A model generated the notes under the pieces. The model was given only the letters and a program-made list of their open reading frames with translations. It was not told the DNA's origin and searched no databases. From IMG/VR virus record IMGVR_UViG_3300028666_000022, positions 248,001-312,000 of that record: a DNA stretch of 64,000 bases. The stretch is one strand, 5' to 3'. The position numbers and the translations under genes were made by a program. Positions 9,569-56,544 of the stretch are shown piece by piece (the first letter of the stretch is position 1; each line of letters opens with the position of its first letter).

Positions 9569-9598
9569 AATATGTTTAACATAAATAATACGAAATAA

Positions 9599-14911: not shown

Positions 14912-15400
14912 TTATTGTTTATTAAGAGTATATACTCCATTTACTAAAAGTGTTTTAATATCTGGTGCAATTAATTTTAATACTAATACTTTATTTATTT
15001 TATCATAAGATATTATTTGCCATACAATACCATTATCTAATGTAATTTGATTTAATTTTGTGTCTAAAGTTAAAAAATTATCTGTAGTATTACCAAAACA
15101 AGCATCAAGTAAATCACATAGATTTGCTCCACCATATCCAGAAGCATTAATTCTAATGTTTAAACTTAAAATTATTTTTCCTTTACTTCTTGTTACAGCA
15201 TCATAAGAAATTTCATCACAATTACTATATACCTTATTATTATATTGATATGAATAAAAATTCCACATGCCATTTAATTCAGTTAATGATATTAAACCAG
15301 TATTAGGATCATCTGGAGTAATTGTATCATCCTTTTTACAACTGGTTACTAATGTTACTATCGTGAACATTAGGGCTACAAATAAATTTATTTTTTTCAT
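14912..15400 (-). CDS. Bacteroidota-type lipoprotein, lipocalin-like beta-barrel
   Basis: MKK + hydrophobic stretch + LVTS-C lipobox followed by KKDD; LNGMWNF strand typical of Bacteroidota lipocalin-like lipoproteins. Confidence 0.72.
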   Translation of the reverse strand: MKKINLFVALMFTIVTLVTSCKKDDTITPDDPNTGLISLTELNGMWNFYSYQYNNKVYSNCDEISYDAVTRSKGKIILSLNIRINASGYGGANLCDLLDACFGNTTDNFLTLDTKLNQITLDNGIVWQIISYDKINKVLVLKLIAPDIKTLLVNGVYTLNKQ

Positions 15401-29292: not shown

Positions 29293-29454
29293 ATGGGATA
29301 TTCAAAAGACAAAGACAGGACATTAGGCATAAGACTTGATGTAGATCTCAAAAAGAGATATTTAAAATTTATTAGTGATAATGGATATTCATTATCGAAA
29401 AGAATAAGAGTTTTATTGGAAAATGATATGAAAAATGAAAAAAACAGTATTTGA
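29293..29454 (+). CDS. Ribbon-helix-helix DNA-binding protein (53 aa, below track cut-off)
   Basis: Hand translation MGYSKDKDRTLGIRLDVDLKKRYLKFISDNGYSLSKRIRVLLENDMKNEKNSI*; alternating beta-strand, helix, G-x-S-x-S turn, helix. Overlaps the next gene by 20 nt. Confidence 0.7.
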   Translation: MGYSKDKDRTLGIRLDVDLKKRYLKFISDNGYSLSKRIRVLLENDMKNEKNSI

Positions 29455-40181: not shown

Positions 40182-40452
40182 AATATATGAAATTATGAAT
40201 AAATTAAAAAATTTCTATGAAAATTATTTAGAATATTATTTTTTCGTATTCAAAATATATTTAAAACTATTTTTAATATCAGCATCAGGATTTTTTATTT
40301 TACAAGGAATAGCTTCATTTTTATTATTTTATGAACAAATATATTCAGAAGAAATAAATTTTAATAATTTAATGATTGGTCCTACTATTTTTGGAATTAT
40401 GATTTGTTTTATTTTTGGAATGCAAATACATCGTTATAATAAATTGAATTAA
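40171..40452 (+). CDS. Hypothetical two-TM membrane protein
   Basis: Two hydrophobic segments. Confidence 0.55.
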   Translation: MEYKIYEIMNKLKNFYENYLEYYFFVFKIYLKLFLISASGFFILQGIASFLLFYEQIYSEEINFNNLMIGPTIFGIMICFIFGMQIHRYNKLN

Positions 40453-43019
40453 TGATACACAAACCCACCAAAGAACAAGAAAAAATATTTACTTATATTG
40501 AAAAACGACCTGAAAATCTATTAATTGAAGCATACGCCGGAGCTGGGAAAAGTTCCACTGTTGTTGAAGCAGTTAGGTTATTACCTAAAGATAAGTCAAT
40601 AACATTTTTAGCTTTTAATAAACACATTCAAGAAGAATTAAAAACTAAATTACCTGAACATGTGAGGTGTTATACAACATATGGTTTAGGAAATGCAGCA
40701 ATTAAAAGAAAATATGGTGATAAGATAGTGTTCGATGAATTCAAAGCAGACAAAATAATTCAAAAGAAAGCTAAAAATTGGGATTTAAATAACGAATTTA
40801 AAAATGAAGAGAAAATAAATTATTATCTAAATAATATAAAAAAATTAGTTAATCTCTGTAGATTAACATTAACAGTAAAGCCAGATTACATACCGTTTTT
40901 AGCTGAAAGACATGATATCAATAATTTAAGTAAACCAAAAGATATTAAAAGAGTTCTAAAAGTACTAGATGAAATGACTATAGATAGAACTTCTTATGAT
41001 TATACCGATATGGTTTATTTACCAGCAGTTGATAATTCAATTTGGATGTTTCCTCAAGATTATGTAATCGTGGATGAATGTTTACCAAAAGAAACATATA
41101 TTTTAACAACAGAAGGTAAAATACAAATAAATTTATTGTGTACTAATTATAATAAAAATATAAAAATACCTAATGTTATTACATATAATGAAACTATAAA
41201 TAAATTTGAAGAAAAGAAAATAAATTGTGTTTGGTGTAATGGGATTAAGGATGTTTATTGTGTTAAATTAGGCACTAAAAGAAAATTGTATGCTACAGTT
41301 AATCATAAATTTTTAACATTAAATGGATGGAAAAGATTAGATGAACTAAAAATTGGAGATGCTATACTATCGAATTATCATAATCAACCATATCATTCGA
41401 TATTAAATAATATACAAAAAGAAATTTTTGTTGGTTCAATTCTTGGTGATGGACATTTATATAGTTTAAGTAAAAATATAGGAAGAATTAGTGTTATTCA
41501 TGGTGAAAAACAAAAGAAATATATTGAATGGAAAGGACAATTTTTTAATTCTAAAATAAATAAAATTGAAAAAAATGGTTATAGTCAAAAGGTTGCATAT
41601 ACTTTTCGAACATTAGGATATTATTTTGATTTAAATATCGAAGATAGTATAAAATCAATAACTCCACAATCATTAGCAATTGCTTGGATGGATGATGCTA
41701 ATTTAAGTAAATTTGAAAATTGTTCAAAATTATATTCATTGGCTACAACAAAAAACTATGTCCAATTATTAAATAAAACAATATTTAATAATTGGAATAT
41801 CGAATCTAGTGTTAGAACACAAAAAAGTTCATCAACAAAAAAAGAATATTATTATTTAGAATTTAATAAAAAAAATACCGAAAAAATATCTGAATTAATT
41901 TCACCGTATATTCATGAATCAATGAAATATAAAATTTTAAAAAAACATTATAATAATATTAATAATGAAAATTGGAATATTATTGATGATAAATACTCAA
42001 ATTTAGGTTGTATTGTTGTTACTGATGAATATAAATTTCATAAAACCGAAAAAACATATGACATGAGTGTTGAGGATAATCATAATTTTATTATTACTTC
42101 GAAAAAAGATAGTAAAAATAGAGGTGGAGCGAGTAATAATGGAATTGTTGCACATAATTGTCAGGATACTGGGTCAGCACAACAAAAAATAATTGAAAAA
42201 ATATTAAAAAAAGATAAATTAACTGGTAAAATTTTAGGTAGATTAATCTCGGTGGGTGATAAATTTCAAAACATATATGCATTTAATGGTAGTAGTGATA
42301 AATGTTTTGAATGGTTCAGAAATTTTCCTAATACAAAAGTTTTACCTCTTTCATATTCTTTTAGGTGCGCCAAAAACATCATTTTAAAAGCAAATGAAAT
42401 TGTACCAGATATTAAAGCATTGGATGATGCACCTGATGGTATTGTTAGAGATGGTGATGTATTAAGTGAAGCTCAGAGTGGTGATTTTGTTTTATGTAGA
42501 ACAACAATGCCATTGGTTAAATTATTTTTTCAATTCTTATTACAACATAAAAAAGCAATTATTAAAGGCAGTGATATTGGAGTGCATCTTATTGAATTAA
42601 TTGGTAAAATTAATAATATTAAACAATTAATTAGTTTTTGGGAAAAAGAATTAGATGATTATAGTAATGATTTAAAATCAAAAGGTATTTTAAATCCAGA
42701 TGAACATAGTGGTTACATTGCTTTAGCTGATAAAGTTTCAACATTATTATTTCTAGCTAAACTTTCAAATAGTATCGAAGATCTTAAAGATAAAATAAGA
42801 ACAATATTTAGTGATGAAATTGAGGGTATTGTGCTCAGTTCTATCCACAAAATCAAGGGGTTAGAGTCAAATAGAGTATTTATTGTTAGACCAGATTTAT
42901 TACCGTTAAAAACTGCAAGAGGATGGCAAAAAGATCAGGAAATGAATTTATCATATGTCTCAATAACGAGGGCCAAATTAGAATTAATTTATGATAGAGA
43001 ATGGTCAGATTTAAAATAA
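40452..43019 (+). CDS. SF1 (UvrD/Rep-like) helicase with intein
   Basis: AYAGAGKS, LAFNK, VIVDE|CQD, SVGD..Q.IYAF.G, LSYSFRC, SSIHKIKGLE, YVSITRAK. Confidence 0.92.
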   Translation: MIHKPTKEQEKIFTYIEKRPENLLIEAYAGAGKSSTVVEAVRLLPKDKSITFLAFNKHIQEELKTKLPEHVRCYTTYGLGNAAIKRKYGDKIVFDEFKADKIIQKKAKNWDLNNEFKNEEKINYYLNNIKKLVNLCRLTLTVKPDYIPFLAERHDINNLSKPKDIKRVLKVLDEMTIDRTSYDYTDMVYLPAVDNSIWMFPQDYVIVDECLPKETYILTTEGKIQINLLCTNYNKNIKIPNVITYNETINKFEEKKINCVWCNGIKDVYCVKLGTKRKLYATVNHKFLTLNGWKRLDELKIGDAILSNYHNQPYHSILNNIQKEIFVGSILGDGHLYSLSKNIGRISVIHGEKQKKYIEWKGQFFNSKINKIEKNGYSQKVAYTFRTLGYYFDLNIEDSIKSITPQSLAIAWMDDANLSKFENCSKLYSLATTKNYVQLLNKTIFNNWNIESSVRTQKSSSTKKEYYYLEFNKKNTEKISELISPYIHESMKYKILKKHYNNINNENWNIIDDKYSNLGCIVVTDEYKFHKTEKTYDMSVEDNHNFIITSKKDSKNRGGASNNGIVAHNCQDTGSAQQKIIEKILKKDKLTGKILGRLISVGDKFQNIYAFNGSSDKCFEWFRNFPNTKVLPLSYSFRCAKNIILKANEIVPDIKALDDAPDGIVRDGDVLSEAQSGDFVLCRTTMPLVKLFFQFLLQHKKAIIKGSDIGVHLIELIGKINNIKQLISFWEKELDDYSNDLKSKGILNPDEHSGYIALADKVSTLLFLAKLSNSIEDLKDKIRTIFSDEIEGIVLSSIHKIKGLESNRVFIVRPDLLPLKTARGWQKDQEMNLSYVSITRAKLELIYDREWSDLK
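41079..42158 (+). mobile_element. Intein (360 aa) with LAGLIDADG endonuclease, inserted in Walker B
   Basis: N-terminal CLPKETYILTTEG, GSILGDG / AWMDDA, YDMSVEDNHNF, GIVAHN followed by +1 Cys. Confidence 0.93.
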
Positions 43020-43370: not shown

Positions 43371-43916
43371 ATGACATGTATTATTGGTTATATTGATAGA
43401 ATTAATAATAAAGTAATACTTGGTGGGGATTCAGCAAGTATTACTAATAAACAAATTATGATAAGAAAAACACCCAAAGTATTTAAAAATGGTAATTTCA
43501 TATTTGGTTCTTCAGGTAGTATTAGATTAAGTCAATTATTGGAAAATTCATTTAAACCACCTAAAATAGAAATAGATACTATTCTTGAGTATATGTGTAT
43601 AACATTCGTTAATGAAATAAGAAATTGTTTAAGAGAAGGTGGCATATTAAATATTAATAATAATATCGAAACAATGGAAAATGATATTATTGTTGGATAT
43701 AAAAATAGATTATTTACAATATATTCAGATTTTACTGTTTTTGAAAATATAAATGATTTTATCTCAATTGGAAGTGGTTTAGAATATGCGTTAGGTTCAT
43801 TACATACTACAAAAGATGATAACATTACCATTGAAAATAAAATATTGTTAGCATTAGGAGCAGCATCTAAATATTGTACTGGAGTTTCTGAGCCATTTAA
43901 CTTAATTAGTACTTAA
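43371..43916 (+). CDS. HslV/proteasome-beta-like Ntn peptidase
   Basis: M-T-CII start, GGDS, K.F, GSSG..R, IGSG..YALG.L. Confidence 0.78.
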   Translation: MTCIIGYIDRINNKVILGGDSASITNKQIMIRKTPKVFKNGNFIFGSSGSIRLSQLLENSFKPPKIEIDTILEYMCITFVNEIRNCLREGGILNINNNIETMENDIIVGYKNRLFTIYSDFTVFENINDFISIGSGLEYALGSLHTTKDDNITIENKILLALGAASKYCTGVSEPFNLIST

Positions 43917-43926
43917 AAATATAATC

Positions 43927-44220
43927 ATGAAGTGGATAGTTAATATAGAGAATAAACCAAATCAAAGAATTGTTGTGAATTTCAATCCTTTGGAAGAACA
44001 ATTAATTTTTAATGGTGAATATAAACCCAAGAATAGAGAATGGATTGTATTTAGTACTGAAAAATATTCAATGAAGCTTGATTTAGAAAAAATCCAAGAA
44101 TTATTGTTTATAACATATGAGAATTTAAAAATACGCCTCGAACAATATGAGATTCTTAATGAAGGTTTTAAATTAATTAATTTAATTGAGATAAAAGAAG
44201 AGGAAGAAGAATTAGGATAA
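43927..44220 (+). CDS. Hypothetical protein
   Basis: ORF track. Confidence 0.6.
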   Translation: MKWIVNIENKPNQRIVVNFNPLEEQLIFNGEYKPKNREWIVFSTEKYSMKLDLEKIQELLFITYENLKIRLEQYEILNEGFKLINLIEIKEEEEELG

Positions 44221-44466
44221 TTTATAAAATTTATTCACTACTACAATATAATCGTTAACAAAAAAGAACTGAAAATTTTCAGTTCTATCTACAAGATGAG
44301 CGAAACGTATATTTTTGACATCAAAACTCATTTTATACATCGAAAATTTAGCTAAAAAATCTAATATTTCAAAAGCTAAATCTTCAATAATTATTTCATC
44401 TTCTTTAACACCAGTTGATTTAAGATAGTTAATTTGATCACTAATTACTGTTTCAAAATTTTTCAT
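44212..44466 (-). CDS. Hypothetical protein
   Basis: ORF track; last gene of the minus-strand cluster. Confidence 0.5.
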   Translation of the reverse strand: MKNFETVISDQINYLKSTGVKEDEIIIEDLAFEILDFLAKFSMYKMSFDVKNIRFAHLVDRTENFQFFFVNDYIVVVNKFYKLS

Positions 44467-44522: not shown

Positions 44523-44954
44523 TTAATCATCCTCGCCATCTTCTTTTGATTTTTTTGCTTTTAGTTCTTCGTTTTCTTTTATTAACATATCAACTTTTTC
44601 ATCATAAATAGCTTTAACCATTTTATGTGTTTCTTTATTTGTTTGACTTAATATATTAAAAGCATCCTCACCAATTTTCTCTCCAACTTCCCTTCTAATT
44701 TCTTTATGATCTTCAATATTCTCATCATGTTTTCTTTGAATTTCAGTTCTTATTTCCGCTTCAGTTTTTTCTCCAATTTTTTTTATTGAAGAAATATAAA
44801 AAATTAACAATGGAGTACCTAAACCAATTGCAAAAGAAGCAATTAATTTATTTGTTTCACTAGTAAATGTCATTAATATCGTAAATACAATATAACCTAA
44901 TATTGTGGAGGTTATAAGTATTGCAAGAAATGATCTTATAAATATTTTTAACAT
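44523..44954 (-). CDS. Two-TM membrane protein with charged coiled-coil tail (holin-like candidate)
   Basis: Two hydrophobic helices, then a highly charged C-terminus. Confidence 0.55.
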   Translation of the reverse strand: MLKIFIRSFLAILITSTILGYIVFTILMTFTSETNKLIASFAIGLGTPLLIFYISSIKKIGEKTEAEIRTEIQRKHDENIEDHKEIRREVGEKIGEDAFNILSQTNKETHKMVKAIYDEKVDMLIKENEELKAKKSKEDGEDD

Positions 44955-45388
44955 AAAAATCTTATTAATAGCAAAAAGTATAATGTTATTGATATTGCAA
45001 ATAAATATTTCAATTCAACTTTAGGAAAAAATCTAATTACAGTAAAATCAACTAAAATTATTAAAAATGACATTGAAAATAATTCAGTTAAATGCCTATT
45101 TGAACATATTTTATTATATTCTCCAAGTGGATGACTTGCTAAAAGAAATTGAAATAATAAATATTCAAAAATAAACATCATAAATCCAATAACAGCTAAT
45201 TTATTTAATGAATCATTTAGATAATATACTAAATATCCAGAAACAGTTAATAACATCGTATATAACAACACATAAAAAAAGCAGTTCCAAAACACACTAG
45301 GAACTGCTCTAGTTATGTAAGTTTCTATTAATGCTCCGAATAGAAATATAATATAAATTATACTGTGTTTTTTTAATTCGTTAAGCAT
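44948..45388 (-). CDS. Multi-pass (about 4-5 TM) membrane protein
   Basis: Hydrophobic throughout; starts 6 nt after the peptide ORF stop and overlaps the next gene. Confidence 0.65.
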   Translation of the reverse strand: MLNELKKHSIIYIIFLFGALIETYITRAVPSVFWNCFFYVLLYTMLLTVSGYLVYYLNDSLNKLAVIGFMMFIFEYLLFQFLLASHPLGEYNKICSNRHLTELFSMSFLIILVDFTVIRFFPKVELKYLFAISITLYFLLLIRFLC

Positions 45389-45394
45389 AGATAA

Positions 45395-45544
45395 CTATTT
45401 TGTTGGTTGTGGCGGTGGTGGAGGTTGTACTATACCATCCTTATTTTTTGATTTTGGTGGTTGTGGCGGTGGTGGGGGTTGTACTATACCTGCTTGAGCC
45501 TTTAAACCAAATAAATTTAGAATATAATTCCAGATTTTTTTCAT
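45395..45544 (-). CDS. Proline-rich tandem-repeat peptide (49 aa, below track cut-off)
   Basis: Hand translation MKKIWNYILNLFGLKAQA-GIVQPPPPPQPPK-SKNKD-GIVQPPPPPQPTK*. Confidence 0.7.
   Translation of the reverse strand: MKKIWNYILNLFGLKAQAGIVQPPPPPQPPKSKNKDGIVQPPPPPQPTK
45397..45490. repeat. 40-bp direct repeat, 38/40 identical (45397-45436 and 45451-45490)
   Basis: Direct reading; GC-rich against an AT-rich background. Confidence 0.9.
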
Positions 45545-45786
45545 TATTAATTGTTTTTTAAATAAAGTTATTTTGTAATTATTGAGATTGTATTTTCTCT
45601 ATAAATAAATAGTAAAAATAATCCTAAAGAGCAATGGTTAGATAAGATTTTTTTATAGAAATTAGATAATTATTTTAGTATGTTTAAAAACATTATAAAA
45701 AATTATAAAAATGTGGATTATTAGATAAGTGAAAGTGTGTTAATTACTTAAGATATGTTAGTGTATAATTATTTATGAATATGATT

Positions 45787-46194
45787 TTATTTATTTTTAA
45801 TAATATATGCTGTGTTATTATTGTTTTTTTCGTCAGCATCATCACCTAGCGCACCACTTGTATTATTAAGTGTTTTTATTGTTAATTTTTCTCTGTTAAT
45901 GGCATCTATCGAACTACTTAACGAACCTATTGATGTGTTTATTTTACCAAGTTCTTGATAAAATAACGTATTTTGACTCTTCTGATCTTCAAACATCTGT
46001 CTATAATTGTTTTCAGTTAAATTTATTTTTGGAACTACAACTAATTGATAAAATCCATAAAAAATACCTAAAATAGTACCAATTGTAAGAAGAAAACTTT
46101 TTACAGTGAAAACAATCTGAGTATTAGCACTAATCTTAAATCCTCCCTCTTCTTGCACATCATCACTAGATTTTGCTATAATTTTCTTTTTCAT
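45787..46194 (-). CDS. Single-TM protein with C-terminal coiled coil
   Basis: FLLTIGTILGIFYGFYQLVVVP then heptad-like region. Confidence 0.6.
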   Translation of the reverse strand: MKKKIIAKSSDDVQEEGGFKISANTQIVFTVKSFLLTIGTILGIFYGFYQLVVVPKINLTENNYRQMFEDQKSQNTLFYQELGKINTSIGSLSSSIDAINREKLTIKTLNNTSGALGDDADEKNNNNTAYIIKNK

Positions 46195-46221: not shown

Positions 46222-46683
46222 TTAATTGTTTGAATTATATACACAATTTTCCCATTTTATTGTCACTTTTATTGACTCCATTGAAGTCTCGTACCAATAT
46301 ATTACTGTTGGTGTTACATCAATAACAGCAGTGAATCCATTAGGGAATTGTTCGTTAGTTACTTCAACATTATCTATGAATACCCTTGCATTTGATATCC
46401 ATGTTTTTACTGTTTTATTATAATATGTTGATTTACTGATTAGAATTAATTCGTACCTGTATTTAGGTAATTCTGAAAGGGTTTTTTGTTTTTGTTTAAA
46501 ATCTCGATGTGTTAATATTGTTTGTCTAGTTACATATGATGATATAGATACGTTGGTTTCATTCGAAATATCATGTCTCCATGTGCCATAATCTACATAT
46601 ATTTTCTTTTTACCATAAGACTGTGCCTCTGTAGAAAAACACGTAAATAATGTCGCTAAAATAAGAAATAATATAAATCTCAT
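46222..46683 (-). CDS. Secreted/periplasmic protein with signal peptide
   Basis: MRFILFLILATLFTCFSTEA-Q; late motif at 46701-10. Confidence 0.6.
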   Translation of the reverse strand: MRFILFLILATLFTCFSTEAQSYGKKKIYVDYGTWRHDISNETNVSISSYVTRQTILTHRDFKQKQKTLSELPKYRYELILISKSTYYNKTVKTWISNARVFIDNVEVTNEQFPNGFTAVIDVTPTVIYWYETSMESIKVTIKWENCVYNSNN

Positions 46684-46827
46684 GGCATTAATATTATATC
46701 TATAAATACTTTCGTAACGATAAAGAATATTAAATTTTATAAAAAATTAGAGAAAATAGTTTTATATGATTAATTATTTGAAAATCCAAGAGATTGGAGT
46801 AAATTTAAAAAAGATTTTAGACTTTAC

Positions 46828-46885: not shown

Positions 46886-47428
46886 ATGAAAAAACTTGAA
46901 ATTAGTACAGAATTAAGAAATGAAATTCTTCTTAAACATAAGAATGGAATTTCGATGCGTAAATTGGAAAAAGAATATCCATATTCATTTGCATTTATTC
47001 AGACGTTAATTAATTCTAGTGAACTGGAAGAAAAATTAAAAACAAATTATCCACAAAAAGAAGGATATTTAATATTTGCTGTTTGTAAAAAAACAAAAAA
47101 AGAATTTATTGACTATTGTAATGATTCAGGTATTATTACTAAGCATTTGTTTAAAACATACCCAAATGAAATTAAAGGAAGTAAATATACTAGAAAATCA
47201 AAAGAATATGAAACAGGCAAATTTTGGTTTGATAAATATTTTACTTTTGAATATAGATTAATTCGTGTTCGTGAAACAAAAAAATGTTTTTATTGTGATT
47301 GGACTACTCATGATTTAGATAATAAAGCAGGTACTTATCAAAGACATTTACAAAATGTTCATAATAAAACAATTTACGATTATCTTCGAGATAATTTCGA
47401 AGATATGTTTTATTTTAAAAATATGTAA
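46886..47428 (+). CDS. HTH + AVCKKT module + C2H2-like finger; probable N-terminal half of a split endonuclease
   Basis: GISMRKL HTH; AVCKKTKKEF...SGIITKHL...FWF; CFYC...HLQNVH; no nuclease motif. Confidence 0.6.
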   Translation: MKKLEISTELRNEILLKHKNGISMRKLEKEYPYSFAFIQTLINSSELEEKLKTNYPQKEGYLIFAVCKKTKKEFIDYCNDSGIITKHLFKTYPNEIKGSKYTRKSKEYETGKFWFDKYFTFEYRLIRVRETKKCFYCDWTTHDLDNKAGTYQRHLQNVHNKTIYDYLRDNFEDMFYFKNM

Positions 47429-47432
47429 AAAC

Positions 47433-47795
47433 ATGAAAGTTTTAATCAATTTAATTATTGAAAATTTAACAGATGACTTATTAAAAAATAAATATAAGTC
47501 ATCTGTTAATAAAAATAAATTTACTGGACATTGTTATGTTGCTACAGAAACATTATATCACTTACTTGATGATAATGAGAAAAAAAATTATATACCAGCA
47601 ATATTAAAAATTAATAATGATACCCATTGGTTTTTAAAAAATAAAATAACTGGTGAAATATTTGATATAACAAAAAATCAATTTAATTATAGTTTAGATT
47701 ATAGTAAATCAATAAATAAAGCTTTTTTAACAAAAAATCCATCAAAAAGAACATTAATATTAATAAATAGAATATATGAAAAAATTAATTTATAA
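47433..47795 (+). CDS. YunG-like (papain/transglutaminase-fold) protein
   Basis: GHCYVA...THWFL...G.IFDIT..QF Cys-His-Asp pattern; start moved to ATG 47433. Confidence 0.55.
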   Translation: MKVLINLIIENLTDDLLKNKYKSSVNKNKFTGHCYVATETLYHLLDDNEKKNYIPAILKINNDTHWFLKNKITGEIFDITKNQFNYSLDYSKSINKAFLTKNPSKRTLILINRIYEKINL

Positions 47796-49686
47796 CAAAA
47801 CAATACTATTATTTTTAGATACTAATGATATTGAAACATTAGAAAAGGGTGATTTAAAAAAAATAAAAGATGATTATCTGCTTATATATGATAATTGTGT
47901 TATTTTTAGTTATTTCGATATAAAATATCATAAAAATATAATTAAAGATAAAATAAATAAATTGAAGTTTATTAAGCAAACTAAAATAAATGCAAGAGAA
48001 TGTAATATTGTAAAAATAGACAACGTTGAAAAAAATAAATTTTTGAATGAAAATCATCTTCAAGAAACCGATAGATCTCAAATATTTTATGGAGCATATT
48101 ATAATAATGAATTACTTGCTGTTATGACATTTGATAATTCAAGAAAAATGAATGGTGGTGTTGAAAAAGATGAAAATGAATATGATTTATCAAGATTTGC
48201 AATTAAAATGGGTTATATTATTGTTGGTGTATTTAATAAGATGCTAATGACATTTATTAATGATTATTCGCCAAATAAAATTATAACATTTGCTGATTTA
48301 GATTTGGTTAATAGAGAAAATAATATTTATTTACACAATAATTTTAAATTATGTAAAGTAATTAACCCTGATTTTAGAATATATTTAAAAAATAAAAATA
48401 ATATCTTTCATAAATTTACTTATGGTAATAAGTTTATGAAAGATGGTAAAATTTCTGACGAAAAGAAAGAAGATGTAAGAGAAAATATGATAAAATTATG
48501 GAACTGTGGAAAAATAAAATATGAATTATTAATAATTAACAAAAAAATAATATATGGTTTTATTTACATAATAAAAAATAAAACTAATGGTAAAATATAT
48601 ATTGGTCAAACAACTAGAAGTTTTACTAGAAGATTATGGGAATATAGAAGCGCATATAAATATAATAATTTTCACAATCAATATCTTGCTAATGCATTCA
48701 ATAAATATGGTTGGGATAATTTTGAAATTTCTGTTATAGATAATGCATTAACTGTTGAAGAATTAAATGAAAAAGAAATCAATTACATTAACAAATATAA
48801 TTCAAATAATAGAGAATTTGGATATAATTTAGAGGCAGGTGGTAATAATTCTCTTCCTAGTTCAGAAACACTTGAAAAAATGTCAATTTCGCATCAAGGT
48901 GTTGTTCAAAGTGATGAATGGGTTGAAAAGAGAATTGCTAAAGCTGGTACTGAAGATGCAAAGAAATATGGAAAAGCTAAAACAGAAGAAGAAAAATTAA
49001 AATTAAGTTTAACCTCAACTAAATTTTGGGAAGGAAAAACCAGAGACGAAGAAACTAGAAGAAAGATAAGTGAAACAAAAAAGAAAAATGGGTTATCGGA
49101 AAAACAAAAAGAATTATCATGTGTACGTGTTTGTAAAGTAAATTCAAAAACTAATGAGATTGTAGAAACATTTGAATCAGTATCGGAAACTGCTAGACGT
49201 GAAAATACTAGTCAGGCAACTATCATTAGAAGATGTTCTGGTGAAACAAAAAATGTTGGCGATTATTTTTATTATTATGAATCAGATTTTTCGAATAATA
49301 TTGTAAGAGAATTTAAATCAACCGAACGCAAAAGTTTGAATAATTTTACTGAAGAAGAATTACATAAAATTTATAATGAACACATTAATGATGGAGTTTC
49401 AGTTAGAGAATTATGTACTAAATATAATCTAATTTATAGTACTCTTTCTAATTATATCAGTAAAAAAAGAAATCCACTTAATTTAGATTCTAAATATTGG
49501 GCTGTTTGTAAGAAAACCAATAAAAAATTTGAAGATTATTTAAATAAATCTGGAGTATTAACAAGACATATTCAAGAAATATATGCTGAAGAGAATTTAG
49601 AATCAAAATTTTCACGAAAGAAAATTGAATTAGAATCTGGACACTTTTGGTACGCTAGATTTTTTGATTTTATTGAAATTAAATAA
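47776..49686 (+). CDS. Chimeric endonuclease: degenerate nuclease/GNAT-like domain fused to GIY-YIG + NUMOD3-like + HTH + AVCKKT module
   Basis: ARECNI...FLNENHLQ...AVMTF...LSRFA...TFAD...WNCG, then GFIYIIKNKTNGKIYIGQT...LNEKEINYI...GYNLEAGG. Confidence 0.75.
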   Translation: MKKLIYNKTILLFLDTNDIETLEKGDLKKIKDDYLLIYDNCVIFSYFDIKYHKNIIKDKINKLKFIKQTKINARECNIVKIDNVEKNKFLNENHLQETDRSQIFYGAYYNNELLAVMTFDNSRKMNGGVEKDENEYDLSRFAIKMGYIIVGVFNKMLMTFINDYSPNKIITFADLDLVNRENNIYLHNNFKLCKVINPDFRIYLKNKNNIFHKFTYGNKFMKDGKISDEKKEDVRENMIKLWNCGKIKYELLIINKKIIYGFIYIIKNKTNGKIYIGQTTRSFTRRLWEYRSAYKYNNFHNQYLANAFNKYGWDNFEISVIDNALTVEELNEKEINYINKYNSNNREFGYNLEAGGNNSLPSSETLEKMSISHQGVVQSDEWVEKRIAKAGTEDAKKYGKAKTEEEKLKLSLTSTKFWEGKTRDEETRRKISETKKKNGLSEKQKELSCVRVCKVNSKTNEIVETFESVSETARRENTSQATIIRRCSGETKNVGDYFYYYESDFSNNIVREFKSTERKSLNNFTEEELHKIYNEHINDGVSVRELCTKYNLIYSTLSNYISKKRNPLNLDSKYWAVCKKTNKKFEDYLNKSGVLTRHIQEIYAEENLESKFSRKKIELESGHFWYARFFDFIEIK

Positions 49687-49961
49687 ATTTAATATTGGGG
49701 TTTAATTAAATAAAATAAATACATGATTAAAGATTAACTAGTTTATATATGTGGTTACTTTTTAATCTCTATGAAGTCAAAAAACTTAGCATACCAGAAA
49801 TGACCAGTTTCTAACTCAATTTTCTTTCTAAGGTATTTTGATTCTAAATTCTCTTCAGGATATGTTTCTTGAATATGTCTTGTCAATACTCCAGATTTAT
49901 TTAAATAATCTTCAAATTTTTTATTGGTTTTCTTGCAAACAGCAATATAATTAGAATCTAA
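49483..49961. repeat. 201-bp inverted repeat (49483-49683 / 49761-49961), 175/201 identical, 77-nt spacer
   Basis: Hand alignment of the 3' ends of the two convergent endonuclease genes; includes an exact 50-bp core (49510-59 / 49885-934). Confidence 0.9.
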
Positions 49962-51164
49962 GTCAAGTACATTTTCTTTTTTATTTTTCTTTTCAATATA
50001 TGATAATAATATTGAAAATCTTATTGAATATTTTTTAGATAATTCTCTTATTGATATAAGAGAATTCATGTGTTCATTATACATATCTAATAATTCATTA
50101 TCTGTAAATTCTTCTAATTTTTTAAATATATTAGATTTGAAATCTTTTAATTCGTTATTTAGAAAATCACATTCATAACACCAATAATATTCACCTTTAT
50201 TTTTTGATATACCTAAACATTTTCTTAATATTGCTTCATATGATAAATTATCTGAATTTAATCTACCAGCATCCGCTAATGATTTAAATTTTTCTACAAT
50301 TTCATTATTTTTATTAATTTTTAAAACTGGTTTAGATACTTTATTTATTCTTTTCTCAATCCATTCTTTATTTTGTTTAATATCTTTTCTTGCTAAAGAT
50401 AATTTTAATTTTGTTTCTAAACTAGCAAGAGAGTTTTTACCACCATTTTCAATATTATAACCAAATTCTCTAATATTTGATTTATATTTATTAATATAAT
50501 TGATTTCTTTTTCATTTAGTTCATCAATATTTGTTGCATAATCAATGATATTGAACTCAAAATTATTTAAATTATGTTTATTAAATGCATGATATAGTAT
50601 ATGATCTTCATTATTTTTTGCTTTTAATATATGTTCATATAATCTGTCTTTCACTCTTATACTTTGACCGACATATTTCTTATTATTTAGTTTATTGATT
50701 ATTAGATAAATATGTCCGAATTCATCTAAAGTAATATCTAATTTAATATTTACATTAATATTATGTTTTTTCATTACCCAAATATTTGTTTTTTCTGAAG
50801 ATGATGTTAAATTATTATTAAAATCATAATTATAACCAAATTCTTCAATATTTGATTTATAAATGTTAGTATGAACAATTTTTTTCAAATCTAACTCACT
50901 AATATTTGATGCACTATCAATGATAGCAAACTCAAAATTATTAATCCCATATTCATTAAATGCATCACATATTGGATGATTTTCACCATTATTTGCTCTT
51001 CGTATATGTTCGCCAAATCTCTTTCTAACTTGAGTACTTTGTCCAACATATTTTTTATTGTTTATTTTATTTGTAAGTAAATAAATATGTCCAAATTCAT
51101 TCATGATTATATTTTTACTAACATTTACTATGATTTCATGTTTTTCAATTAACCAAGTTTCCAT
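49755..51164 (-). CDS. Tandem double GIY-YIG endonuclease + HTH + AVCKKT module
   Basis: Two GHIYL..NK.NNKKYVGQS domains; the second has LNEKEINYI, the first lacks that Glu. Confidence 0.8.
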   Translation of the reverse strand: METWLIEKHEIIVNVSKNIIMNEFGHIYLLTNKINNKKYVGQSTQVRKRFGEHIRRANNGENHPICDAFNEYGINNFEFAIIDSASNISELDLKKIVHTNIYKSNIEEFGYNYDFNNNLTSSSEKTNIWVMKKHNINVNIKLDITLDEFGHIYLIINKLNNKKYVGQSIRVKDRLYEHILKAKNNEDHILYHAFNKHNLNNFEFNIIDYATNIDELNEKEINYINKYKSNIREFGYNIENGGKNSLASLETKLKLSLARKDIKQNKEWIEKRINKVSKPVLKINKNNEIVEKFKSLADAGRLNSDNLSYEAILRKCLGISKNKGEYYWCYECDFLNNELKDFKSNIFKKLEEFTDNELLDMYNEHMNSLISIRELSKKYSIRFSILLSYIEKKNKKENVLDLDSNYIAVCKKTNKKFEDYLNKSGVLTRHIQETYPEENLESKYLRKKIELETGHFWYAKFFDFIEIKK

Positions 51165-51271: not shown

Positions 51272-52945
51272 TTATGATAAGTCACCAATACCAAAAGTAG
51301 TTAAACCATCGCAATATATACGGCCAAAATAACGATTTAACACCATTTTCTTAGCGTACCTAGTCATTATCCCGCGAATTGGGCTAAAATCAAACGGGTT
51401 ATACATCACAGGTGTTAGCTGTAATGGCACGTACGGAGCATATATGTAACCGGTCTCAAGTATGCTAGTACCTTTATGTCCAATTAACACCGTATTAGCA
51501 GGTGAATATGGATCACGGTATACTATATAACGTCCACTTAAAGTACCAATTTTCTCAATACCCATGTTATACTTATCCTGTTCAGGACTTGCATTACTAA
51601 CGTGGAAATATTCAAGGTCATCAAATACAGCACTAACTTCAGGAGAAACTACTATCCAAGAAGCACCACCACGAAGGGTTGCTTTATGAATCTGAGCAGA
51701 AATCTGATTGATTTTAGTAACTAGAGTTTGATTCCAGTCTTTCTGTGTTCCGTAATAAGCTGTAGATTGTCTACGTAAACCATTATAGTCCCAACGACTT
51801 GTCCAAGCAGCACCTCTACGAAGATCACGAAGAATTTCACGGTCAATTTCAGCAGCCATTTGTTCAGATAACAAAGCAGTTAATTCAGCTTCGGCATCGA
51901 TATTATGGAAAGCAGAAACGTCTTGTGCTAATTCAGGAGTCCACTGAGCACGCATTTTACGAGTTTCAACACTAACAGTAACTTGATCAAGTACGAATGT
52001 TACTTCTGCCATTCTTGAATCTTCTTCAAGGTCAGAATAAACACTATAACGATACCTAAAAGTAGGAGTTGTAGCAGCACTCATTGCATTATAACCATCA
52101 GTACCAGCATAAGTAAGATCAACAACAACAGTTAATTTTCCAGTAGCATCAACAATTGCTTGTCCGTACTTCTGTACTTTAACGTTGAAAGGAAGAGGAT
52201 TACCTGCAGTGATACCTTCTGTTGAAAATGGAGAAGGAGCAACAAAATTAACACTAGAAGAAATTTTCAAACTAGCTAAAAAAGATTCTGTATCCATAGG
52301 AACTCCAGTAGGACCAACTAATTTACCTTCATAAGTAGTAGAAAAACCACTAATAACTAAGGTTAATGATTTGTCAGCAGCAGTATAAGCATAAGGACTT
52401 TGAGCACAAGTACCTGAAGTAATTGTAAGTTCACCTTTAGACCTATCAAATAATGAAGTACCTTCATCGTCATATGATTTAGCATAGAATGCATCATATA
52501 AAGATTGGCTTTCAAACTGAGTTTTAGCTGAAGCAGCAGTAGAAGCAGCATTTGCATAAGCACCATCAGGTGAATAATTGTCAAATTGACTAGCAGTTGT
52601 TTGTTTCCTTGAGCTTGCTTTAGGATTGATGTAATATAACTTACCAATAGGTAAATTCAATGCTTGAACCGATACGATGTCATTAGCTAAAAGTTTAGCA
52701 AATACCCTACGTATTACAGGAAAAGCAACTGTTTCAAACTGACCACTAGATGCAGATTCAGTTGATTCATTAATCATGTGGCTTAGTTGGTTTTCGAATA
52801 ACTGTGCGCAGTTTTCTTTTACGTTACCTTCAAGGCCTTCTAACAAACCAATTTTTTCCCAACGGTTTGTAGTTATTTCTCTTTGTTCGCGAAGTTGTTT
52901 TAATCCAATATTGCCAACTTCGGCACTTTCCATTAAAAATCCCAT
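51272..52945 (-). CDS. gp23: Major capsid protein (T4 gp23-like)
   Basis: P.IRR.F..L.A.DIVSVQ.L..P.G, RKMRAQWTPELAQD..AFHNIDAEAEL, YAPYVPL, P..G.MTRY. Confidence 0.96.
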   Translation of the reverse strand: MGFLMESAEVGNIGLKQLREQREITTNRWEKIGLLEGLEGNVKENCAQLFENQLSHMINESTESASSGQFETVAFPVIRRVFAKLLANDIVSVQALNLPIGKLYYINPKASSRKQTTASQFDNYSPDGAYANAASTAASAKTQFESQSLYDAFYAKSYDDEGTSLFDRSKGELTITSGTCAQSPYAYTAADKSLTLVISGFSTTYEGKLVGPTGVPMDTESFLASLKISSSVNFVAPSPFSTEGITAGNPLPFNVKVQKYGQAIVDATGKLTVVVDLTYAGTDGYNAMSAATTPTFRYRYSVYSDLEEDSRMAEVTFVLDQVTVSVETRKMRAQWTPELAQDVSAFHNIDAEAELTALLSEQMAAEIDREILRDLRRGAAWTSRWDYNGLRRQSTAYYGTQKDWNQTLVTKINQISAQIHKATLRGGASWIVVSPEVSAVFDDLEYFHVSNASPEQDKYNMGIEKIGTLSGRYIVYRDPYSPANTVLIGHKGTSILETGYIYAPYVPLQLTPVMYNPFDFSPIRGIMTRYAKKMVLNRYFGRIYCDGLTTFGIGDLS

Positions 52946-54636: not shown

Positions 54637-56544
54637 TTATAGTAAAAACTTATCTATTGCAGATGATAATTTATTATCTTCTTCTTTTAAATAAACACCA
54701 TTTTTATTTACATAACTTTCTTCAAAACTAAAATTTCCTTTATTTGGAAATAAATATGCTCCGGGAGTACTTGGTGTAGAAACTAAATCAAATGCTATTA
54801 ATTCAAAATCATTTTGAACATAATTTTCACCTTGTATTTCTTTTAATGTTCCAACTCCCCTTGATGATATTCCAATTCTGATTTTGTTTTGTAGATATAA
54901 AACTATTTTATCACCAATGACTGAAACAACACCATACTTAATATAACCGGGAGATACAATTATTTTTAATTGACCAAACAAAACATTTTCTTCTTTACCT
55001 TTTCCCCACCACATTTTTGTTATTAAATGTGATATGTTTTGTAAGGAAACTACAGATGAATTACCAGTCCAATGTGCTTTACCATTTACTTTAACTAAGA
55101 AATTACCATTTTTAACTCTAACACAAGCAATGTTATCATTAAAATCAATTTCAGTAACTTTAATAAATCTTTTATCTAAATAAATGTGTTTAGTTTTTGA
55201 TATGTTTAAATTATATTGTATTTGACTATTCTCTGCTTTAATCAATCTATTTGTTTCGAGAGTTTCATTAATATATTCAATTGTACCATCAGATAAAACA
55301 ACTTCTTTTTTTACTATTTTTTTATCGATAATATTTCTATCTTTGGGTTGATATGTTGTAATTGTACCACTACTACCAGTTTTAATTAAGATCTCATGTA
55401 AATCTTCAATTAGTTGTCTTGATGTTGAAAAAACAGATTTTTTATTATTTAGTTTTCCATTTTTTTCAACATAATCAATGTTCCTGCCATCACCCAACCA
55501 GAACCAATGAAATAATATTTTTAATAAATCCGAAGATGCTTGTTTTAATTCTATTGGAATATATTTATTATGTGAATGTCCTAATATATATAGATAATTA
55601 TATAATCTAGCATCATTAATATGATATTGACATTTACCATCATCATGCTCGTCTTTCCAAAATTTAAATGGTAATTTTTTTAATAAATTTTCAATAAGAA
55701 TCTTTTTTTCTTTATTTTTTTGTGTTATAATAACACTATAACCACTTAATTTATATTGATTTGATTTAGCACCAGTACTATGACCTTCAGCTAAATATAT
55801 TCCCATAAAAGCAAACCAATCTTCTGATTTAATTTTTATTGGTGTAGTATAACGTTCAATTAAATCATGTTTTGAATTAAAACTTAACGTATTCTTATCT
55901 ACTCCTTCTAAAGTAAAATATTCATTATAATTACCTTGCCATTCAGCAGTTTTTAATATTTTATATTTTCCTGATGAAAGAACATTGTTTAGATTATTAT
56001 AAATATCTTTAGCATAATAATATTCTCTTTTGCCTTTAGAGTTTTCTATTAAAAATCTATGATTTTCTGTTACAGTTAAATCGATTGAATTACTTAAAAA
56101 TTTATACATTTTACCTTGATATGGTGTATATATTTTTTTATCTATTTTTTGAATTTCAATTTGATTAGTTTCTGTATTAAGTGTTAATATTTCTTCATTC
56201 TCTGAAATATCTTTAAACCATTTCCATCCATCTTTAGTGCATATTTTAGATTCTGAAGCATTCACGCAATCTGGATGATCAGCTTCATTTACAGCACAAT
56301 TAGTATCAATTAGTTTTTGATATTCTATAACTTGAGGAACTAAAACATCTTTTGGATAAATTCTACCATTTTTATTTTTCACACCCCATTTTTGAAGTAT
56401 GCAATCTATTAAGACTGGTTCATTAGGTTTAAGTTCAAAACCTTCTTTAATTAATTGTGGATTTAAGTCTGAAGTAATAAAACCTGAATCCGACTCAATA
56501 AGAATTCCAAAACCCGTCTCATTTGCTTTTAATATATTGCCCAT
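54637..56544 (-). CDS. gp21: Prohead core protease (T4 gp21-like) with intein
   Basis: KNKNGRIYP, EADHPD|SSVVSLQNISH, IGISSRGVG, FDLVSTPSTPGA; spliced length 232 aa. Confidence 0.92.
   Translation of the reverse strand: MGNILKANETGFGILIESDSGFITSDLNPQLIKEGFELKPNEPVLIDCILQKWGVKNKNGRIYPKDVLVPQVIEYQKLIDTNCAVNEADHPDCVNASESKICTKDGWKWFKDISENEEILTLNTETNQIEIQKIDKKIYTPYQGKMYKFLSNSIDLTVTENHRFLIENSKGKREYYYAKDIYNNLNNVLSSGKYKILKTAEWQGNYNEYFTLEGVDKNTLSFNSKHDLIERYTTPIKIKSEDWFAFMGIYLAEGHSTGAKSNQYKLSGYSVIITQKNKEKKILIENLLKKLPFKFWKDEHDDGKCQYHINDARLYNYLYILGHSHNKYIPIELKQASSDLLKILFHWFWLGDGRNIDYVEKNGKLNNKKSVFSTSRQLIEDLHEILIKTGSSGTITTYQPKDRNIIDKKIVKKEVVLSDGTIEYINETLETNRLIKAENSQIQYNLNISKTKHIYLDKRFIKVTEIDFNDNIACVRVKNGNFLVKVNGKAHWTGNSSVVSLQNISHLITKMWWGKGKEENVLFGQLKIIVSPGYIKYGVVSVIGDKIVLYLQNKIRIGISSRGVGTLKEIQGENYVQNDFELIAFDLVSTPSTPGAYLFPNKGNFSFEESYVNKNGVYLKEEDNKLSSAIDKFLL
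55060..56268 (-). mobile_element. Intein (403 aa) with LAGLIDADG endonuclease; ends Gly-Asn, +1 Ser
   Basis: CVNASESKICTKDGWK, VTENHRF block B, GIYLAEG / FWLGDG, CVRVKNGNFLV...WTGN/S. Confidence 0.9.

What the first reader, a model, noticed from the sequence alone, without database searches (positions are those of the whole stretch)
45388..45728. Hidden 49-aa peptide with a duplicated GIVQPPPPPQP motif, translationally coupled to membrane genes
Seen: MKKIWNYILNLFGLKAQA followed by two copies of GIVQPPPPPQP(P/T)K. The leader is amphipathic and ends in A-Q-A, resembling a signal-peptidase site directly before copy 1; a basic spacer precedes copy 2. A multi-TM gene starts 6 nt downstream and overlaps a two-TM gene. 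Upstream are a TATTTATAG late-type motif and three TTAGATAA copies (45638, 45662, 45721). Inference: a processed multi-copy peptide precursor plus membrane receptor or exporter (phage-phage signalling or lysis timing), or a Pro-rich cationic membrane/ribosome-active peptide. No arbitrium-type intracellular receptor is visible.
Basis: partly seen in the sequence, partly recalled or inferred. Interest (0 to 1): 0.62.

Follow-up and report, generated by a model that had tools for sequence, protein, structure and literature searches.

The report
Polyproline mini-gene heading a phage lysis module
A real 49-codon gene with two five-proline runs opens a chain of membrane-protein genes in a giant Bacteroidota phage; an unrelated crAss-like phage has the same arrangement next to a cell-wall hydrolase, so it looks like part of the lysis machinery rather than a signalling peptide.

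Summary
ORF 45395-45544 (-) encodes 49 aa with two GIVQPPPPPQP(P/T)K units, a 40-nt repeat that is 95% identical with 54-nt spacing. It lies 6 nt before a 5-TM gene (p146), which overlaps a 2-TM plus long-helix gene (p143).

The window belongs to a 339,898-bp, 25% GC jumbo phage with Bacteroidota-type gene starts. Its codon usage is gene-like. The 358 other predicted proteins contain no PPPP run.

p146 and p143 have only one relative anywhere: a crAss-like contig, L004. There a 30-codon ORF (MPVIPPPPPPPTK...) overlaps the p146 homologue's start, followed by the p143 homologue and a small M23 peptidase in overlapping cistrons. So the polyproline linkage is conserved, but the leader and the duplication are not.

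A genome-wide late promoter motif precedes the cassette, at p153.

Best reading (about 0.38): a small cationic polyproline protein of a mobile late lysis module, resembling the P5 motif of lambda Rz1 or a disruptin. Close rival (about 0.30): a cis-acting polyproline translational brake on the chained lysis genes. A secreted multi-copy signalling precursor is not supported.

The parts
46701..46709 (-). Late-type phage promoter motif GTATTTATA, 17 nt upstream of the p153 start codon
   Evidence: The 9-mer occurs 54 times in the genome, mostly 10-40 nt before start codons, and in the upstream regions of 33 genes (14-fold enriched). It also precedes the tail sheath gene (site at 12483) and the gene just upstream of the major head gene (site at 54555).
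46222..46683 (-). p153: exported protein with a strong signal peptide and Q-rule cleavage (TEA|QS); first gene of the minus-strand cassette
   Evidence: Q-rule from PMC5837995. No family hit. No counterpart seen among the genes flanking the L004 module.
45787..46194 (-). p135: bitopic membrane protein with one TM segment (about residues 27-54) and a C-terminal polar domain; its architecture resembles an i-spanin
   Evidence: No family hit. No counterpart seen among the genes flanking the L004 module.
45545..45786 (-). 242-nt, 16% GC spacer holding three TTATCTAA octamers (45638-45645, 45662-45669, 45721-45728)
   Evidence: The cluster is unique in the genome but only marginally beyond chance (P about 0.045). 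No strong promoter or terminator was detected here.
45395..45544 (-). pep49: polyproline mini-gene, 49 aa, net charge +6, 13 prolines. Residues 1-18 form an amphipathic leader.
   Evidence: Gene callers list it in five independent assemblies. A natural P41L variant occurs in L131.
45451..45490 (-). Repeat copy 1 (GIVQPPPPPQPPK)
45397..45436 (-). Repeat copy 2 (GIVQPPPPPQPTK, followed directly by the stop codon)
   Evidence: It shares 9 of 13 residues with MPVIPPPPPPPTK of L004:9928-10020.
44948..45388 (-). p146: five-TM membrane protein whose start lies 6 nt after the pep49 stop
   Evidence: Its only relative among 1.84 billion representative proteins is P0002 (33% identity, E 1.7e-12), on crAss-like contig L004. 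A nonsense variant at codon 75 occurs in assembly L005.
44523..44954 (-). p143: two-TM helical hairpin plus a charged helix of about 80 residues (shaped like a class II holin); overlaps p146 by 7 nt
   Evidence: Homologous to L004:10441-10920 (32% identity, E 6e-22).
44212..44466 (-). p84: small soluble acidic protein, last gene of the minus-strand block
   Evidence: No family hit. No counterpart seen among the genes flanking the L004 module.

Best explanation
pep49 is a genuine translated first cistron of a small, horizontally mobile three-cistron module: a polyproline mini-gene, a 5-TM protein, and a 2-TM protein with a long helix. The module belongs to the late envelope-disruption (lysis) apparatus of Bacteroidota phages.

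The selected feature is the polyproline tract with its flanks: a hydrophobic pair, then P5-7, then P-T-K. I take the product to act in trans as a small cationic (+6) peptide carrying a polyproline-II motif. It would work at the membrane together with the holin-like pair.

Two roles are possible. It could help destroy the outer membrane, as the essential P5 motif of lambda Rz1 or the phiKT disruptin do. Or it could tune hole formation, like an antiholin.

In the jumbo phage the unit has recently been duplicated in frame and carries an N-terminal amphipathic helix. That helix more likely holds the peptide on the membrane than serves as a classical cleaved signal peptide.

Shown: the ORF, its gene-like codon usage, the tight cistron chaining, the conserved linkage, and late promoter context for the cassette.

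Inferred: translation, the lysis role, and action in trans.
For: (1) Coding signal. The codon score is 0.85 bit/codon, like real genes, and the leader alone scores 0.54. The start context is A-rich like other genes. The duplication period is 54 nt, so it stays in frame.

(2) Extreme non-randomness. The 358 other predicted proteins have no PPPP, and 0.0015 P5 runs are expected.

(3) Conserved linkage.
- p146 and p143 have one relative locus, L004.
- The only run of four or more prolines in any frame of its 14 kb lies in a 30-codon ATG ORF that overlaps the p146 homologue's start. The chance of that placement is about 0.004.
- The prolines use different codons in the two phages (CCT x7 versus CCC/CCA/CCG).
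- The antisense frames differ (poly-Arg versus Val/Ala-rich). So the conserved feature is the amino-acid sequence, including V before and P-T-K after the run (9 of 13 identical, against about 33% for the neighbouring proteins).
- Both peptides carry a net charge of +6.

(4) Lysis context.
- In L004 the chain continues by overlap into a stand-alone 158-aa M23 peptidase (Pfam E 6e-11; PHROG 'endolysin' E 6e-7).
- It starts just after a terminator-like hairpin that follows the capsid and ring genes.
- In the window the cassette follows a late promoter motif shared with the tail sheath gene and the major-head operon.
- p143 has the shape of a class II holin.

(5) Precedents.
- Lambda Rz1 needs its penta-proline stretch for function (PMC5295617).
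- phiKT gp28 is a 56-aa, +7 peptide without a targeting signal that replaces spanins (10.1101/515445).

(6) The only two SNPs across six assemblies of the 2.7-kb cassette fall in pep49 (P41L) and p146 (E75stop). This fits a dispensable, tunable lysis-timing pair.
Against: - There are only two family members, so no substitution statistics are possible.
- In the jumbo phage no cell-wall hydrolase is adjacent. An Amidase_2 gene and an M23 gene lie about 180-195 kb away, so the lysis assignment rests on the L004 context and on protein architecture.
- Neither peptide has a cysteine or a lipobox, so neither is an o-spanin.
- The proline part is not amphipathic-helical, unlike gp28.
- Apart from the proline block, V and P-T-K, the two peptides share nothing. 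L004's Lys-rich tail may simply be the A-rich start region of the next gene read in another frame.
- No family, fold or language-model lead names p146 or p143 as a holin.
- All observations in points 1-3 fit equally well if the act of translating the prolines, rather than the product, is what matters.
Confidence: 0.38

Rival explanations
1. Cis-acting translational brake. The polyproline mini-ORF is translated, but its product is irrelevant. Five to seven consecutive Pro codons slow or stall ribosomes and depend on EF-P. Because the cistrons are chained (6-nt gap, then 7-nt and 20-nt overlaps) in a host that does not use Shine-Dalgarno sites, the stall would limit and delay ribosome flow into the lethal membrane and lysis genes. 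That would make it a lysis timer tied to host translation capacity.
For: - The proline run is by far the best conserved element, while the leader, the tail and the copy number vary.
- In both phages the ORF comes immediately before the module's two membrane-protein genes; in L004 it follows a terminator-like hairpin.
- In the window the last Pro codons lie about 20-35 nt from the p146 start, so a stalled ribosome could occlude it.
- Polyproline is otherwise avoided in this proteome: PP occurs 49 times against 71 expected, and there is no PPPP.
- The phage encodes no tRNA-Pro.
- Precedents exist. The Pro-codon leader ORF mgtP is controlled by EF-P (PMC5299641). Lysis genes of crAss-like phages are proposed to be translationally gated by stop-codon recoding (PMC10136315).
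Against: - Neither junction shows significant RNA structure of the kind an attenuator needs (z -1.68 and -0.76).
- In L004 the run ends about 40 nt before the next start, which has its own A-rich context.
- Three prolines would be enough for a stall, yet the flanks (V, P-T-K) are conserved too. The jumbo phage also keeps an 18-residue amphipathic leader with gene-like codons.
- Short gaps and overlaps between phage genes are common and do not show coupling.
Confidence: 0.3
2. pep49 is a secreted, processed multi-copy precursor whose 13-aa units act as a phage-phage communication signal, sensed or exported by the adjacent membrane proteins.
For: - The N-terminus starts MKK, and KA|QA fits Bacteroidetes signal-peptidase I sites.
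- Two near-identical units are separated by a basic spacer.
- Membrane proteins are adjacent.
Against: - The only homologous locus has one unit starting at codon 2, no export signal, and an in-frame stop six codons upstream.
- The duplication is recent (38/40 nt identical).
- The leader's hydrophobicity (1.14) is far below that of real signal peptides in this phage.
- No receptor-like, kinase, DNA-binding or peptide-import protein was detected in the cassette.
- The cassette sits behind a late promoter and, in L004, inside a lysis chain. This is not where lysis-lysogeny decision genes sit, and both phages look virulent (a jumbo myovirus and a crAss-like phage).
Confidence: 0.03
3. The module is not a lysis device. 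It would be another late membrane function, such as superinfection exclusion, envelope remodelling or a virion-assembly aid, with the mini-ORF as its small subunit. The neighbourhood with M23 in L004 would then be coincidental.
For: - The jumbo phage's candidate endolysins lie elsewhere. An Amidase_2 gene at genome 110904-111521 has an i-spanin-like 261-aa neighbour, and an M23 protein with an N-terminal anchor lies at about 98.8-99.7 kb.
- No holin family matches.
- A p146 nonsense allele is the assembled consensus in one sample, so p146 may be dispensable.
Against: - The overlapping cistron chain into the M23 peptidase in L004 argues for joint expression.
- p143 has the size, two TM segments and charged tail typical of holins.
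- Lysis genes are scattered in large myoviruses such as T4 (general knowledge).
Confidence: 0.2
4. pep49 is not expressed at all. The C-rich repeat would be a DNA or RNA element, or a chance ORF.
For:
- The ORF is short and of low complexity.
Against: - The frame, the ATG start and the polyproline are conserved in L004 with different codons and a different antisense reading.
- Codon usage and start context are gene-like.
- The duplication is in frame.
- No Rfam-type structure signal was seen.
Confidence: 0.08

Closest known systems
Lambda Rz1 o-spanin (proline-rich region with an essential penta-proline stretch)
   Same: - It is a small lysis-cassette protein whose mature part is about 25% proline.
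- It has a P5 run followed by a second Q-P-P-type stretch and flanking hydrophobic residues (PMC5295617).
- pep49 has an N-terminal hydrophobic or amphipathic segment, then P5-Q-P-P twice.
- A bitopic i-spanin-like protein (p135) is encoded just upstream.
   Different: - pep49 has no cysteine, so no lipobox, lipid anchor or disulfide.
- The L004 homologue has no export signal at all.
- The conserved partners are multi-TM proteins, not a type II coiled-coil protein.
- There is no detectable sequence homology.
phiKT gp28 'disruptin' (cationic lysis peptide that replaces spanins)
   Same: - Both are under 80 aa with a net charge of +6/+7.
- Both are encoded beside holin and endolysin genes.
- gp28 has no membrane-targeting signal, as in the L004 peptide (10.1101/515445).
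   Different: gp28 is predicted to be an amphipathic alpha-helix, like LL-37. Here the core is a polyproline stretch that cannot be helical in that sense. Function is untested.
Proline-codon leader ORFs mgtP and mgtL of Salmonella
   Same: They are short ORFs with consecutive Pro codons placed before membrane-protein genes. Ribosome pausing, modulated by EF-P, sets downstream expression (PMC5299641, PMC6460261).
   Different: - Those act through alternative leader RNA hairpins and transcription attenuation. No such structure is detectable here.
- Here the run is much longer (5-7 prolines, twice).
- The setting is a phage lysis chain in a host that does not use Shine-Dalgarno sites.
Arbitrium AimP and other phage communication peptides
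   Same: A small phage ORF of about 40-50 aa with an N-terminal hydrophobic part.
   Different: - There is no AimR-type receptor.
- The setting is a diderm Bacteroidota host, a late promoter and lysis genes.
- The homologue lacks a secretion signal.

Membership tests
Two-component spanin, outer-membrane subunit (Rz1-like o-spanin) | Signal peptidase II signal with a lipobox cysteine | tested here: not met
   pep49 has no Cys. The L004 mini-ORF has no signal and no Cys.
Two-component spanin, outer-membrane subunit (Rz1-like o-spanin) | Small, proline-rich periplasmic domain | tested here: met
   13 of 49 residues are proline, with two P5 runs. Compare Rz1, with 10 Pro in 40 residues and an essential P5.
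Two-component spanin, outer-membrane subunit (Rz1-like o-spanin) | Gene embedded in, overlapping or next to an i-spanin gene (N-terminal TM plus periplasmic coiled coil) in a lysis cassette | tested here: inconclusive
   p135, upstream, has that architecture, but it is separated by 242 nt and has no counterpart among the genes flanking the L004 module. The conserved neighbours are multi-TM proteins.
Disruptin (phiKT gp28 type) | Under 80 aa, net charge at least +4, no membrane-localisation signal | tested here: met
   Both peptides are +6. L004 has no signal. The pep49 leader is only weakly hydrophobic.
Disruptin (phiKT gp28 type) | Predominantly amphipathic alpha-helical, like cationic antimicrobial peptides | tested here: not met
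   Only residues 1-18 of pep49 can form an amphipathic helix. The conserved core is polyproline.
Disruptin (phiKT gp28 type) | Complements a spanin defect or disrupts the outer membrane | not testable with these tools
   Needs the lambda Rz/Rz1-amber complementation assay.
Proline-codon regulatory leader ORF (mgtP/mgtL type) | Short upstream ORF with consecutive Pro codons before the regulated gene | tested here: met
Proline-codon regulatory leader ORF (mgtP/mgtL type) | Alternative RNA stem-loops whose choice depends on ribosome position | tested here: not met
   Folding energies are not different from shuffles at either locus (z -1.68; z -0.76).
Proline-codon regulatory leader ORF (mgtP/mgtL type) | EF-P or prolyl-tRNA dependence of downstream expression | not testable with these tools
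   Needs reporter assays or toeprinting.
Arbitrium-type phage communication system | Secreted precursor plus an adjacent intracellular TPR receptor (AimR) and regulated target | tested here: not met
   No such protein was found among the neighbours. The homologue lacks an export signal.
Holin (for p143 and p146) | Small membrane protein with at least one TM segment and a charged C-terminal tail, encoded with an endolysin | tested here: inconclusive
   p143 has two TM segments and a charged helix. Its L004 homologue overlaps an M23 peptidase gene. No holin family matches, and no endolysin is adjacent in the window.
Secretion-monitoring arrest peptides (SecM, MifM, VemP) | N-terminal targeting signal, C-terminal arrest motif, downstream secretion-factor gene | tested here: not met
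   The signal is weak or absent. p146 has no similarity to Sec or YidC components.

The most novel reading that the evidence does not exclude
The polyproline mini-ORF is a new kind of lysis clock. It would be an EF-P-gated translational brake at the head of a chain of overlapping lysis cistrons, tying holin and endolysin output to the host's translation capacity. This would be a solution specific to Bacteroidota phages, whose hosts do not use Shine-Dalgarno sites and so offer no ribosome-binding-site strength to tune. It would parallel the stop-codon recoding proposed for lysis genes in crAss-like phages.
Probability: 0.25. Interest if true: 0.75.

Novelty: new variant of a known kind. Interest (0 to 1): 0.5.

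Why it matters
How Bacteroidota phages, including crAss-like phages and jumbo phages, open the cell envelope is poorly known, and canonical spanins are seldom identifiable in them. This work defines a compact module of a polyproline mini-gene and two membrane proteins. The module is shared by two otherwise unrelated phage types and, in one of them, is chained to a peptidoglycan hydrolase.

It gives a concrete, cheap test object:
- two short peptides;
- two small membrane proteins;
- standard lambda holin and spanin complementation assays;
- Pro-to-Ala codon swaps.

Either outcome would be informative. One outcome is a lipid-anchor-free polyproline envelope peptide related in principle to the Rz1 P5 motif. 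The other is the first polyproline translational timer of phage lysis.

Tried and rejected
Searches for relatives:
- Nucleotide search of the cassette against GenBank phages: no match.
- Word search with pep49 and with p146: nothing.
- Word search with the p143 profile: only the two known members.
- tblastn of p146, its L004 homologue, the p143 homologue and the L004 M23 peptidase against GenBank phages: no match.
- Back-translated pattern scans with p146, the HslV-like neighbour, the L004 capsid protein and profiles A2 and A3, in IMG/VR, JGI metagenomes and GTDB genomes: only the window's own contig.
- The exhaustive search was used only after these left p146 open. It gave the one relative, P0002.

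Family, fold and structure searches:
- Pfam, PHROGs, NCBIfam and PADLOC gave nothing significant for pep49, p146, p143, p135, p153 or p84.
- The protein-atlas feature search gave only unnamed clusters below 0.9.
- AF2 models of p146 (pLDDT 67) and p143 (pLDDT 72) gave no meaningful PDB or Atlas fold match.

Complex prediction of pep49 with p146 gave no verdict (score 0.00). It is not evidence either way.

Pattern scan for P5-x-P-T-K in IMG/VR: mostly unrelated proteins or chance frames. No further small ORF before a membrane gene turned up in AT-rich contigs.

Ideas considered and dropped:
- Programmed frameshifting: CCT repeats are not slippery.
- A nucleic-acid-level C-rich element: the codons differ between the two phages.
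- A proline-rich antimicrobial peptide of the ribosome-binding type: no Arg and no PRP motifs.
- An AgrD/AgrB-like pair: no support from any search.
- An alternative genetic code: stop usage is TAA 181, TGA 21, TAG 15 in long ORFs, and table 11 reads everything.
Full report
**What the window is.** The window is bases 248001-312000 of a 339,898-bp viral contig with direct terminal repeats, judged 100% complete, at 25% GC. It is a JGI metagenome contig.

It is a jumbo myovirus. The window holds a tail sheath gene (9649-12414), a major head gene (51272-52945) and a head protease (54637-56544). It also holds a helicase interrupted by an intein and many homing endonucleases.

Several features point to a Bacteroidota host:
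- Only 2% of long ORFs have a Shine-Dalgarno-like sequence, and positions -14 to -9 are A-rich.
- Upstream regions are enriched in TAnnTTTG-like words.
- The clear signal peptides obey the Bacteroidetes Q-rule (PMC5837995).

The standard code reads all genes.

**Check of the observation.** The 49-codon ORF at 45395-45544 (-) and its two GIVQPPPPPQP(P/T)K units are there.
- At the DNA level the units are a 40-nt direct repeat, 95% identical, 54 nt apart, so in frame.
- The stop codon is 6 nt from the start of p146 (44948-45388). p146 has five predicted TM helices.
- p146 overlaps by 7 nt the start of p143 (44523-44954). p143 is a two-helix membrane hairpin running into a charged helix of about 80 residues.
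- The three TTATCTAA octamers are at the stated places.
- Their clustering is unique in the genome but only marginally unusual, with P about 0.045 by random placement. The word is not enriched genome-wide.

**Is it more than chance, and is it a gene?**
- In 358 predicted proteins (92,555 residues) there are three PPP and no PPPP. PP is under-represented, and 0.0015 P5 runs are expected. pep49 has two.
- Its codon score (0.85 bit/codon) is within the range of long genes (0.70 +/- 0.17) and in the top 4% of ORFs of 40-60 aa. The leader alone scores 0.54.
- The start context and the AAA second codon match the genome's pattern.
- Gene callers list the ORF in five independent assemblies of the same phage.

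**Promoter and signal peptide claims.** De novo word counting found a strong upstream motif, GTATTTATA. It occurs 54 times in the genome, mostly 10-40 nt before start codons, and lies in the upstream regions of 33 genes.
- It precedes the tail sheath gene and the gene heading the major-head operon. I therefore read it as the late promoter.
- A copy lies at 46709, just before p153, the first gene of the minus-strand cassette p153-p135-pep49-p146-p143-p84.
So pep49 is probably read from the p153 late promoter or from an unrecognised one.
- The leader has MKK and KA|QA, which fits the Q-rule. Its hydrophobic core, however, is far weaker (1.14) than that of true signal peptides in this phage (2.2-3.5).
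- The leader is strongly amphipathic. I read it as a membrane-surface helix or, at best, a weak signal.

**Relatives.** No library names any of the six cassette proteins.
- Word searches failed, so the exhaustive search was run with p146. It returned one truncated identical copy and a single true relative, P0002 (148 aa, 33% identity, E 1.7e-12).
- P0002 lies on a 19.5-kb contig, L004, which carries a crAss-type capsid and ring proteins. Its capsid protein is about 35% identical to known Crassvirales of Bacteroides, Flavobacterium and Cellulophaga.
- The next gene in L004 is homologous to p143 (32% identity, E 6e-22).
- Directly upstream, overlapping the P0002 start by 20 nt, is a 30-codon ATG ORF beginning MPVIPPPPPPPTK and ending in a Lys-rich tail. 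It has an in-frame stop six codons before the ATG.
- This is the only run of four or more prolines in any frame of the 14-kb locus.
- Aligned with pep49 copy 2, nine of 13 residues agree: V, P5, P, T and K.
- The prolines use CCT x7 in L004 but CCC/CCA/CCG in the window. The antisense frames read differently. So the conserved feature is the translated proline sequence.
- Both peptides are +6.
- All further searches found no third member. These were profile searches in IMG/VR, JGI metagenomes, GTDB genomes and GenBank phages.

**Context in L004.** The mini-ORF starts 37 nt after a terminator-like hairpin that follows the structural genes.
- The chain then runs mini-ORF, p146 homologue, p143 homologue, and a stand-alone 158-aa M23 peptidase. 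Each overlaps the next by 7-20 nt.
- The M23 protein matches Pfam Peptidase_M23 (E 6e-11) and a PHROG annotated as endolysin (E 6e-7).
- This is the layout of a lysis cassette.

In the jumbo phage the candidate wall hydrolases are elsewhere:
- an Amidase_2 gene at genome 110904-111521, with an i-spanin-like neighbour;
- an anchored M23 protein at about 98.8-99.7 kb.

Scattered lysis genes are usual for large myoviruses (general knowledge), but this leaves the lysis role in the window inferred rather than shown.

**Population variants.** Six assemblies carry the cassette, and across 2.7 kb only two differences exist:
- E75-to-stop in p146 (L005);
- P41L, the first proline of the second P5, in pep49 (L131).

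Both fall in the coupled pair, which makes up 22% of the region. This hints that the pair is tunable or dispensable, as antiholin-type regulators are. Two SNPs prove nothing.

**Mechanism.** Two readings fit almost equally.

(a) Trans-acting product. This would be a small cationic peptide whose polyproline-II rod, flanked by hydrophobic residues, acts at the membrane with the holin-like pair.
- The nearest functional precedents are the essential P5 stretch of the lambda o-spanin Rz1 (PMC5295617) and the phiKT disruptin (10.1101/515445).
- Membership of either family fails on defining features. There is no lipobox and the core is not helical.
- It may still work like them.

(b) Cis-acting brake. 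Five to seven consecutive Pro codons are the classic EF-P-dependent pause. At the head of a chain of overlapping cistrons, in a host without Shine-Dalgarno sites, they would limit ribosome flow into lethal genes.
- Precedents are mgtP (PMC5299641) and the translational gating proposed for crAss lysis genes (PMC10136315).
- No attenuator-like RNA structure is detectable.

I rank (a) slightly higher. The flanking residues are conserved, the whole unit including its flanks was duplicated in frame, and the jumbo phage keeps an 18-residue amphipathic leader with gene-like codon usage.

The signalling-precursor idea is not supported. The relative has one copy and no leader, no receptor is present, and the setting is late and lytic.

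**Limits.**
- There are only two family members.
- The structure models are of low confidence.
- The complex prediction gave no verdict.

Noticed in passing
Whole genome; in the window at 1895(+), 12483(-), 12681(+), 18826(-), 29212(-), 29257(+), 32041(-), 46709(-), 54555(-): A strong phage promoter-like motif, consensus about TTTTTAGTATTTATAAWAAA. GTATTTATA occurs 54 times, mostly 10-40 nt before start codons. It precedes the tail sheath gene and the head operon, so it is probably the late promoter.
   Followed up: partly
Whole genome: A second upstream-enriched word family, TATATTTGTAACAAA. It contains the Bacteroidota -7 element TAnnTTTG and probably marks host-RNA-polymerase (early) promoters. 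It supports a Bacteroidota host.
   Followed up: no
window 40452-43019 (+): A UvrD-type DNA helicase interrupted by an intein carrying a LAGLIDADG endonuclease (PHROG and Pfam hits).
   Followed up: no
window 1957-3336, 8081-9607, 29435-30907, 47776-49686, 49755-51164: At least five large homing-endonuclease genes (GIY-YIG and HNH types) in 64 kb. The block at 46886-49686 (+) separates the membrane cassette from the head genes on the same strand and may be a later insertion.
   Followed up: no
window 45166 (L005) and 45423 (L131): These are the only two SNPs among six assemblies across the 2.7-kb cassette. One is a nonsense codon in p146 (E75stop) and the other is P41L in pep49.
   Followed up: partly
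G000:C1:109454-111521 (-) and L007:952-1848: Candidate lysis genes elsewhere in the phage. One is an Amidase_2 protein (205 aa); downstream of it, two ORFs further on, lies a 261-aa protein with an N-terminal TM segment, a coiled-coil-like middle and a C-terminal hydrophobic segment (spanin-like). The other is a 298-aa M23 peptidase with an N-terminal membrane anchor.
   Followed up: partly
L004:9869-9895: A terminator-like hairpin (a 9-bp G+C-containing stem followed by a T-run) sits between the structural genes and the polyproline mini-ORF of the crAss-like contig. It could attenuate transcription into the lysis chain.
   Followed up: no
L113 (about 11210-11366, +) and L013:7511-7702 (+): In GC-rich IMG/VR contigs, small ORFs have a signal peptide (with a lipobox cysteine in L113), cysteines, and a C-terminal run of 9-10 prolines followed by TK and basic residues. 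They look like Rz1-type o-spanins ending in the same P(n)-T-K motif. Their context was not resolved.
   Followed up: partly
L094, L051, L069, L012, L105: A recurrent family of 66-77-aa ORFs with an N-terminal polyproline-TK stretch. In L094 it lies directly before what looks, from its N-terminal sequence alone, like a podovirus portal gene; the downstream ORFs in the other loci were not identified. They are unrelated to the module studied here and were picked up by the pattern scan.
   Followed up: no
window 43371-43916 (+): An HslV/proteasome-type Ntn-hydrolase gene (PHROG 1040, E 2e-20). Homologues at 30-37% identity are scattered in large phages of many hosts.
   Followed up: no
window 14912-15400 (-): A 162-aa predicted lipoprotein with the lipobox VTSC followed by KKDD.
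   Followed up: no
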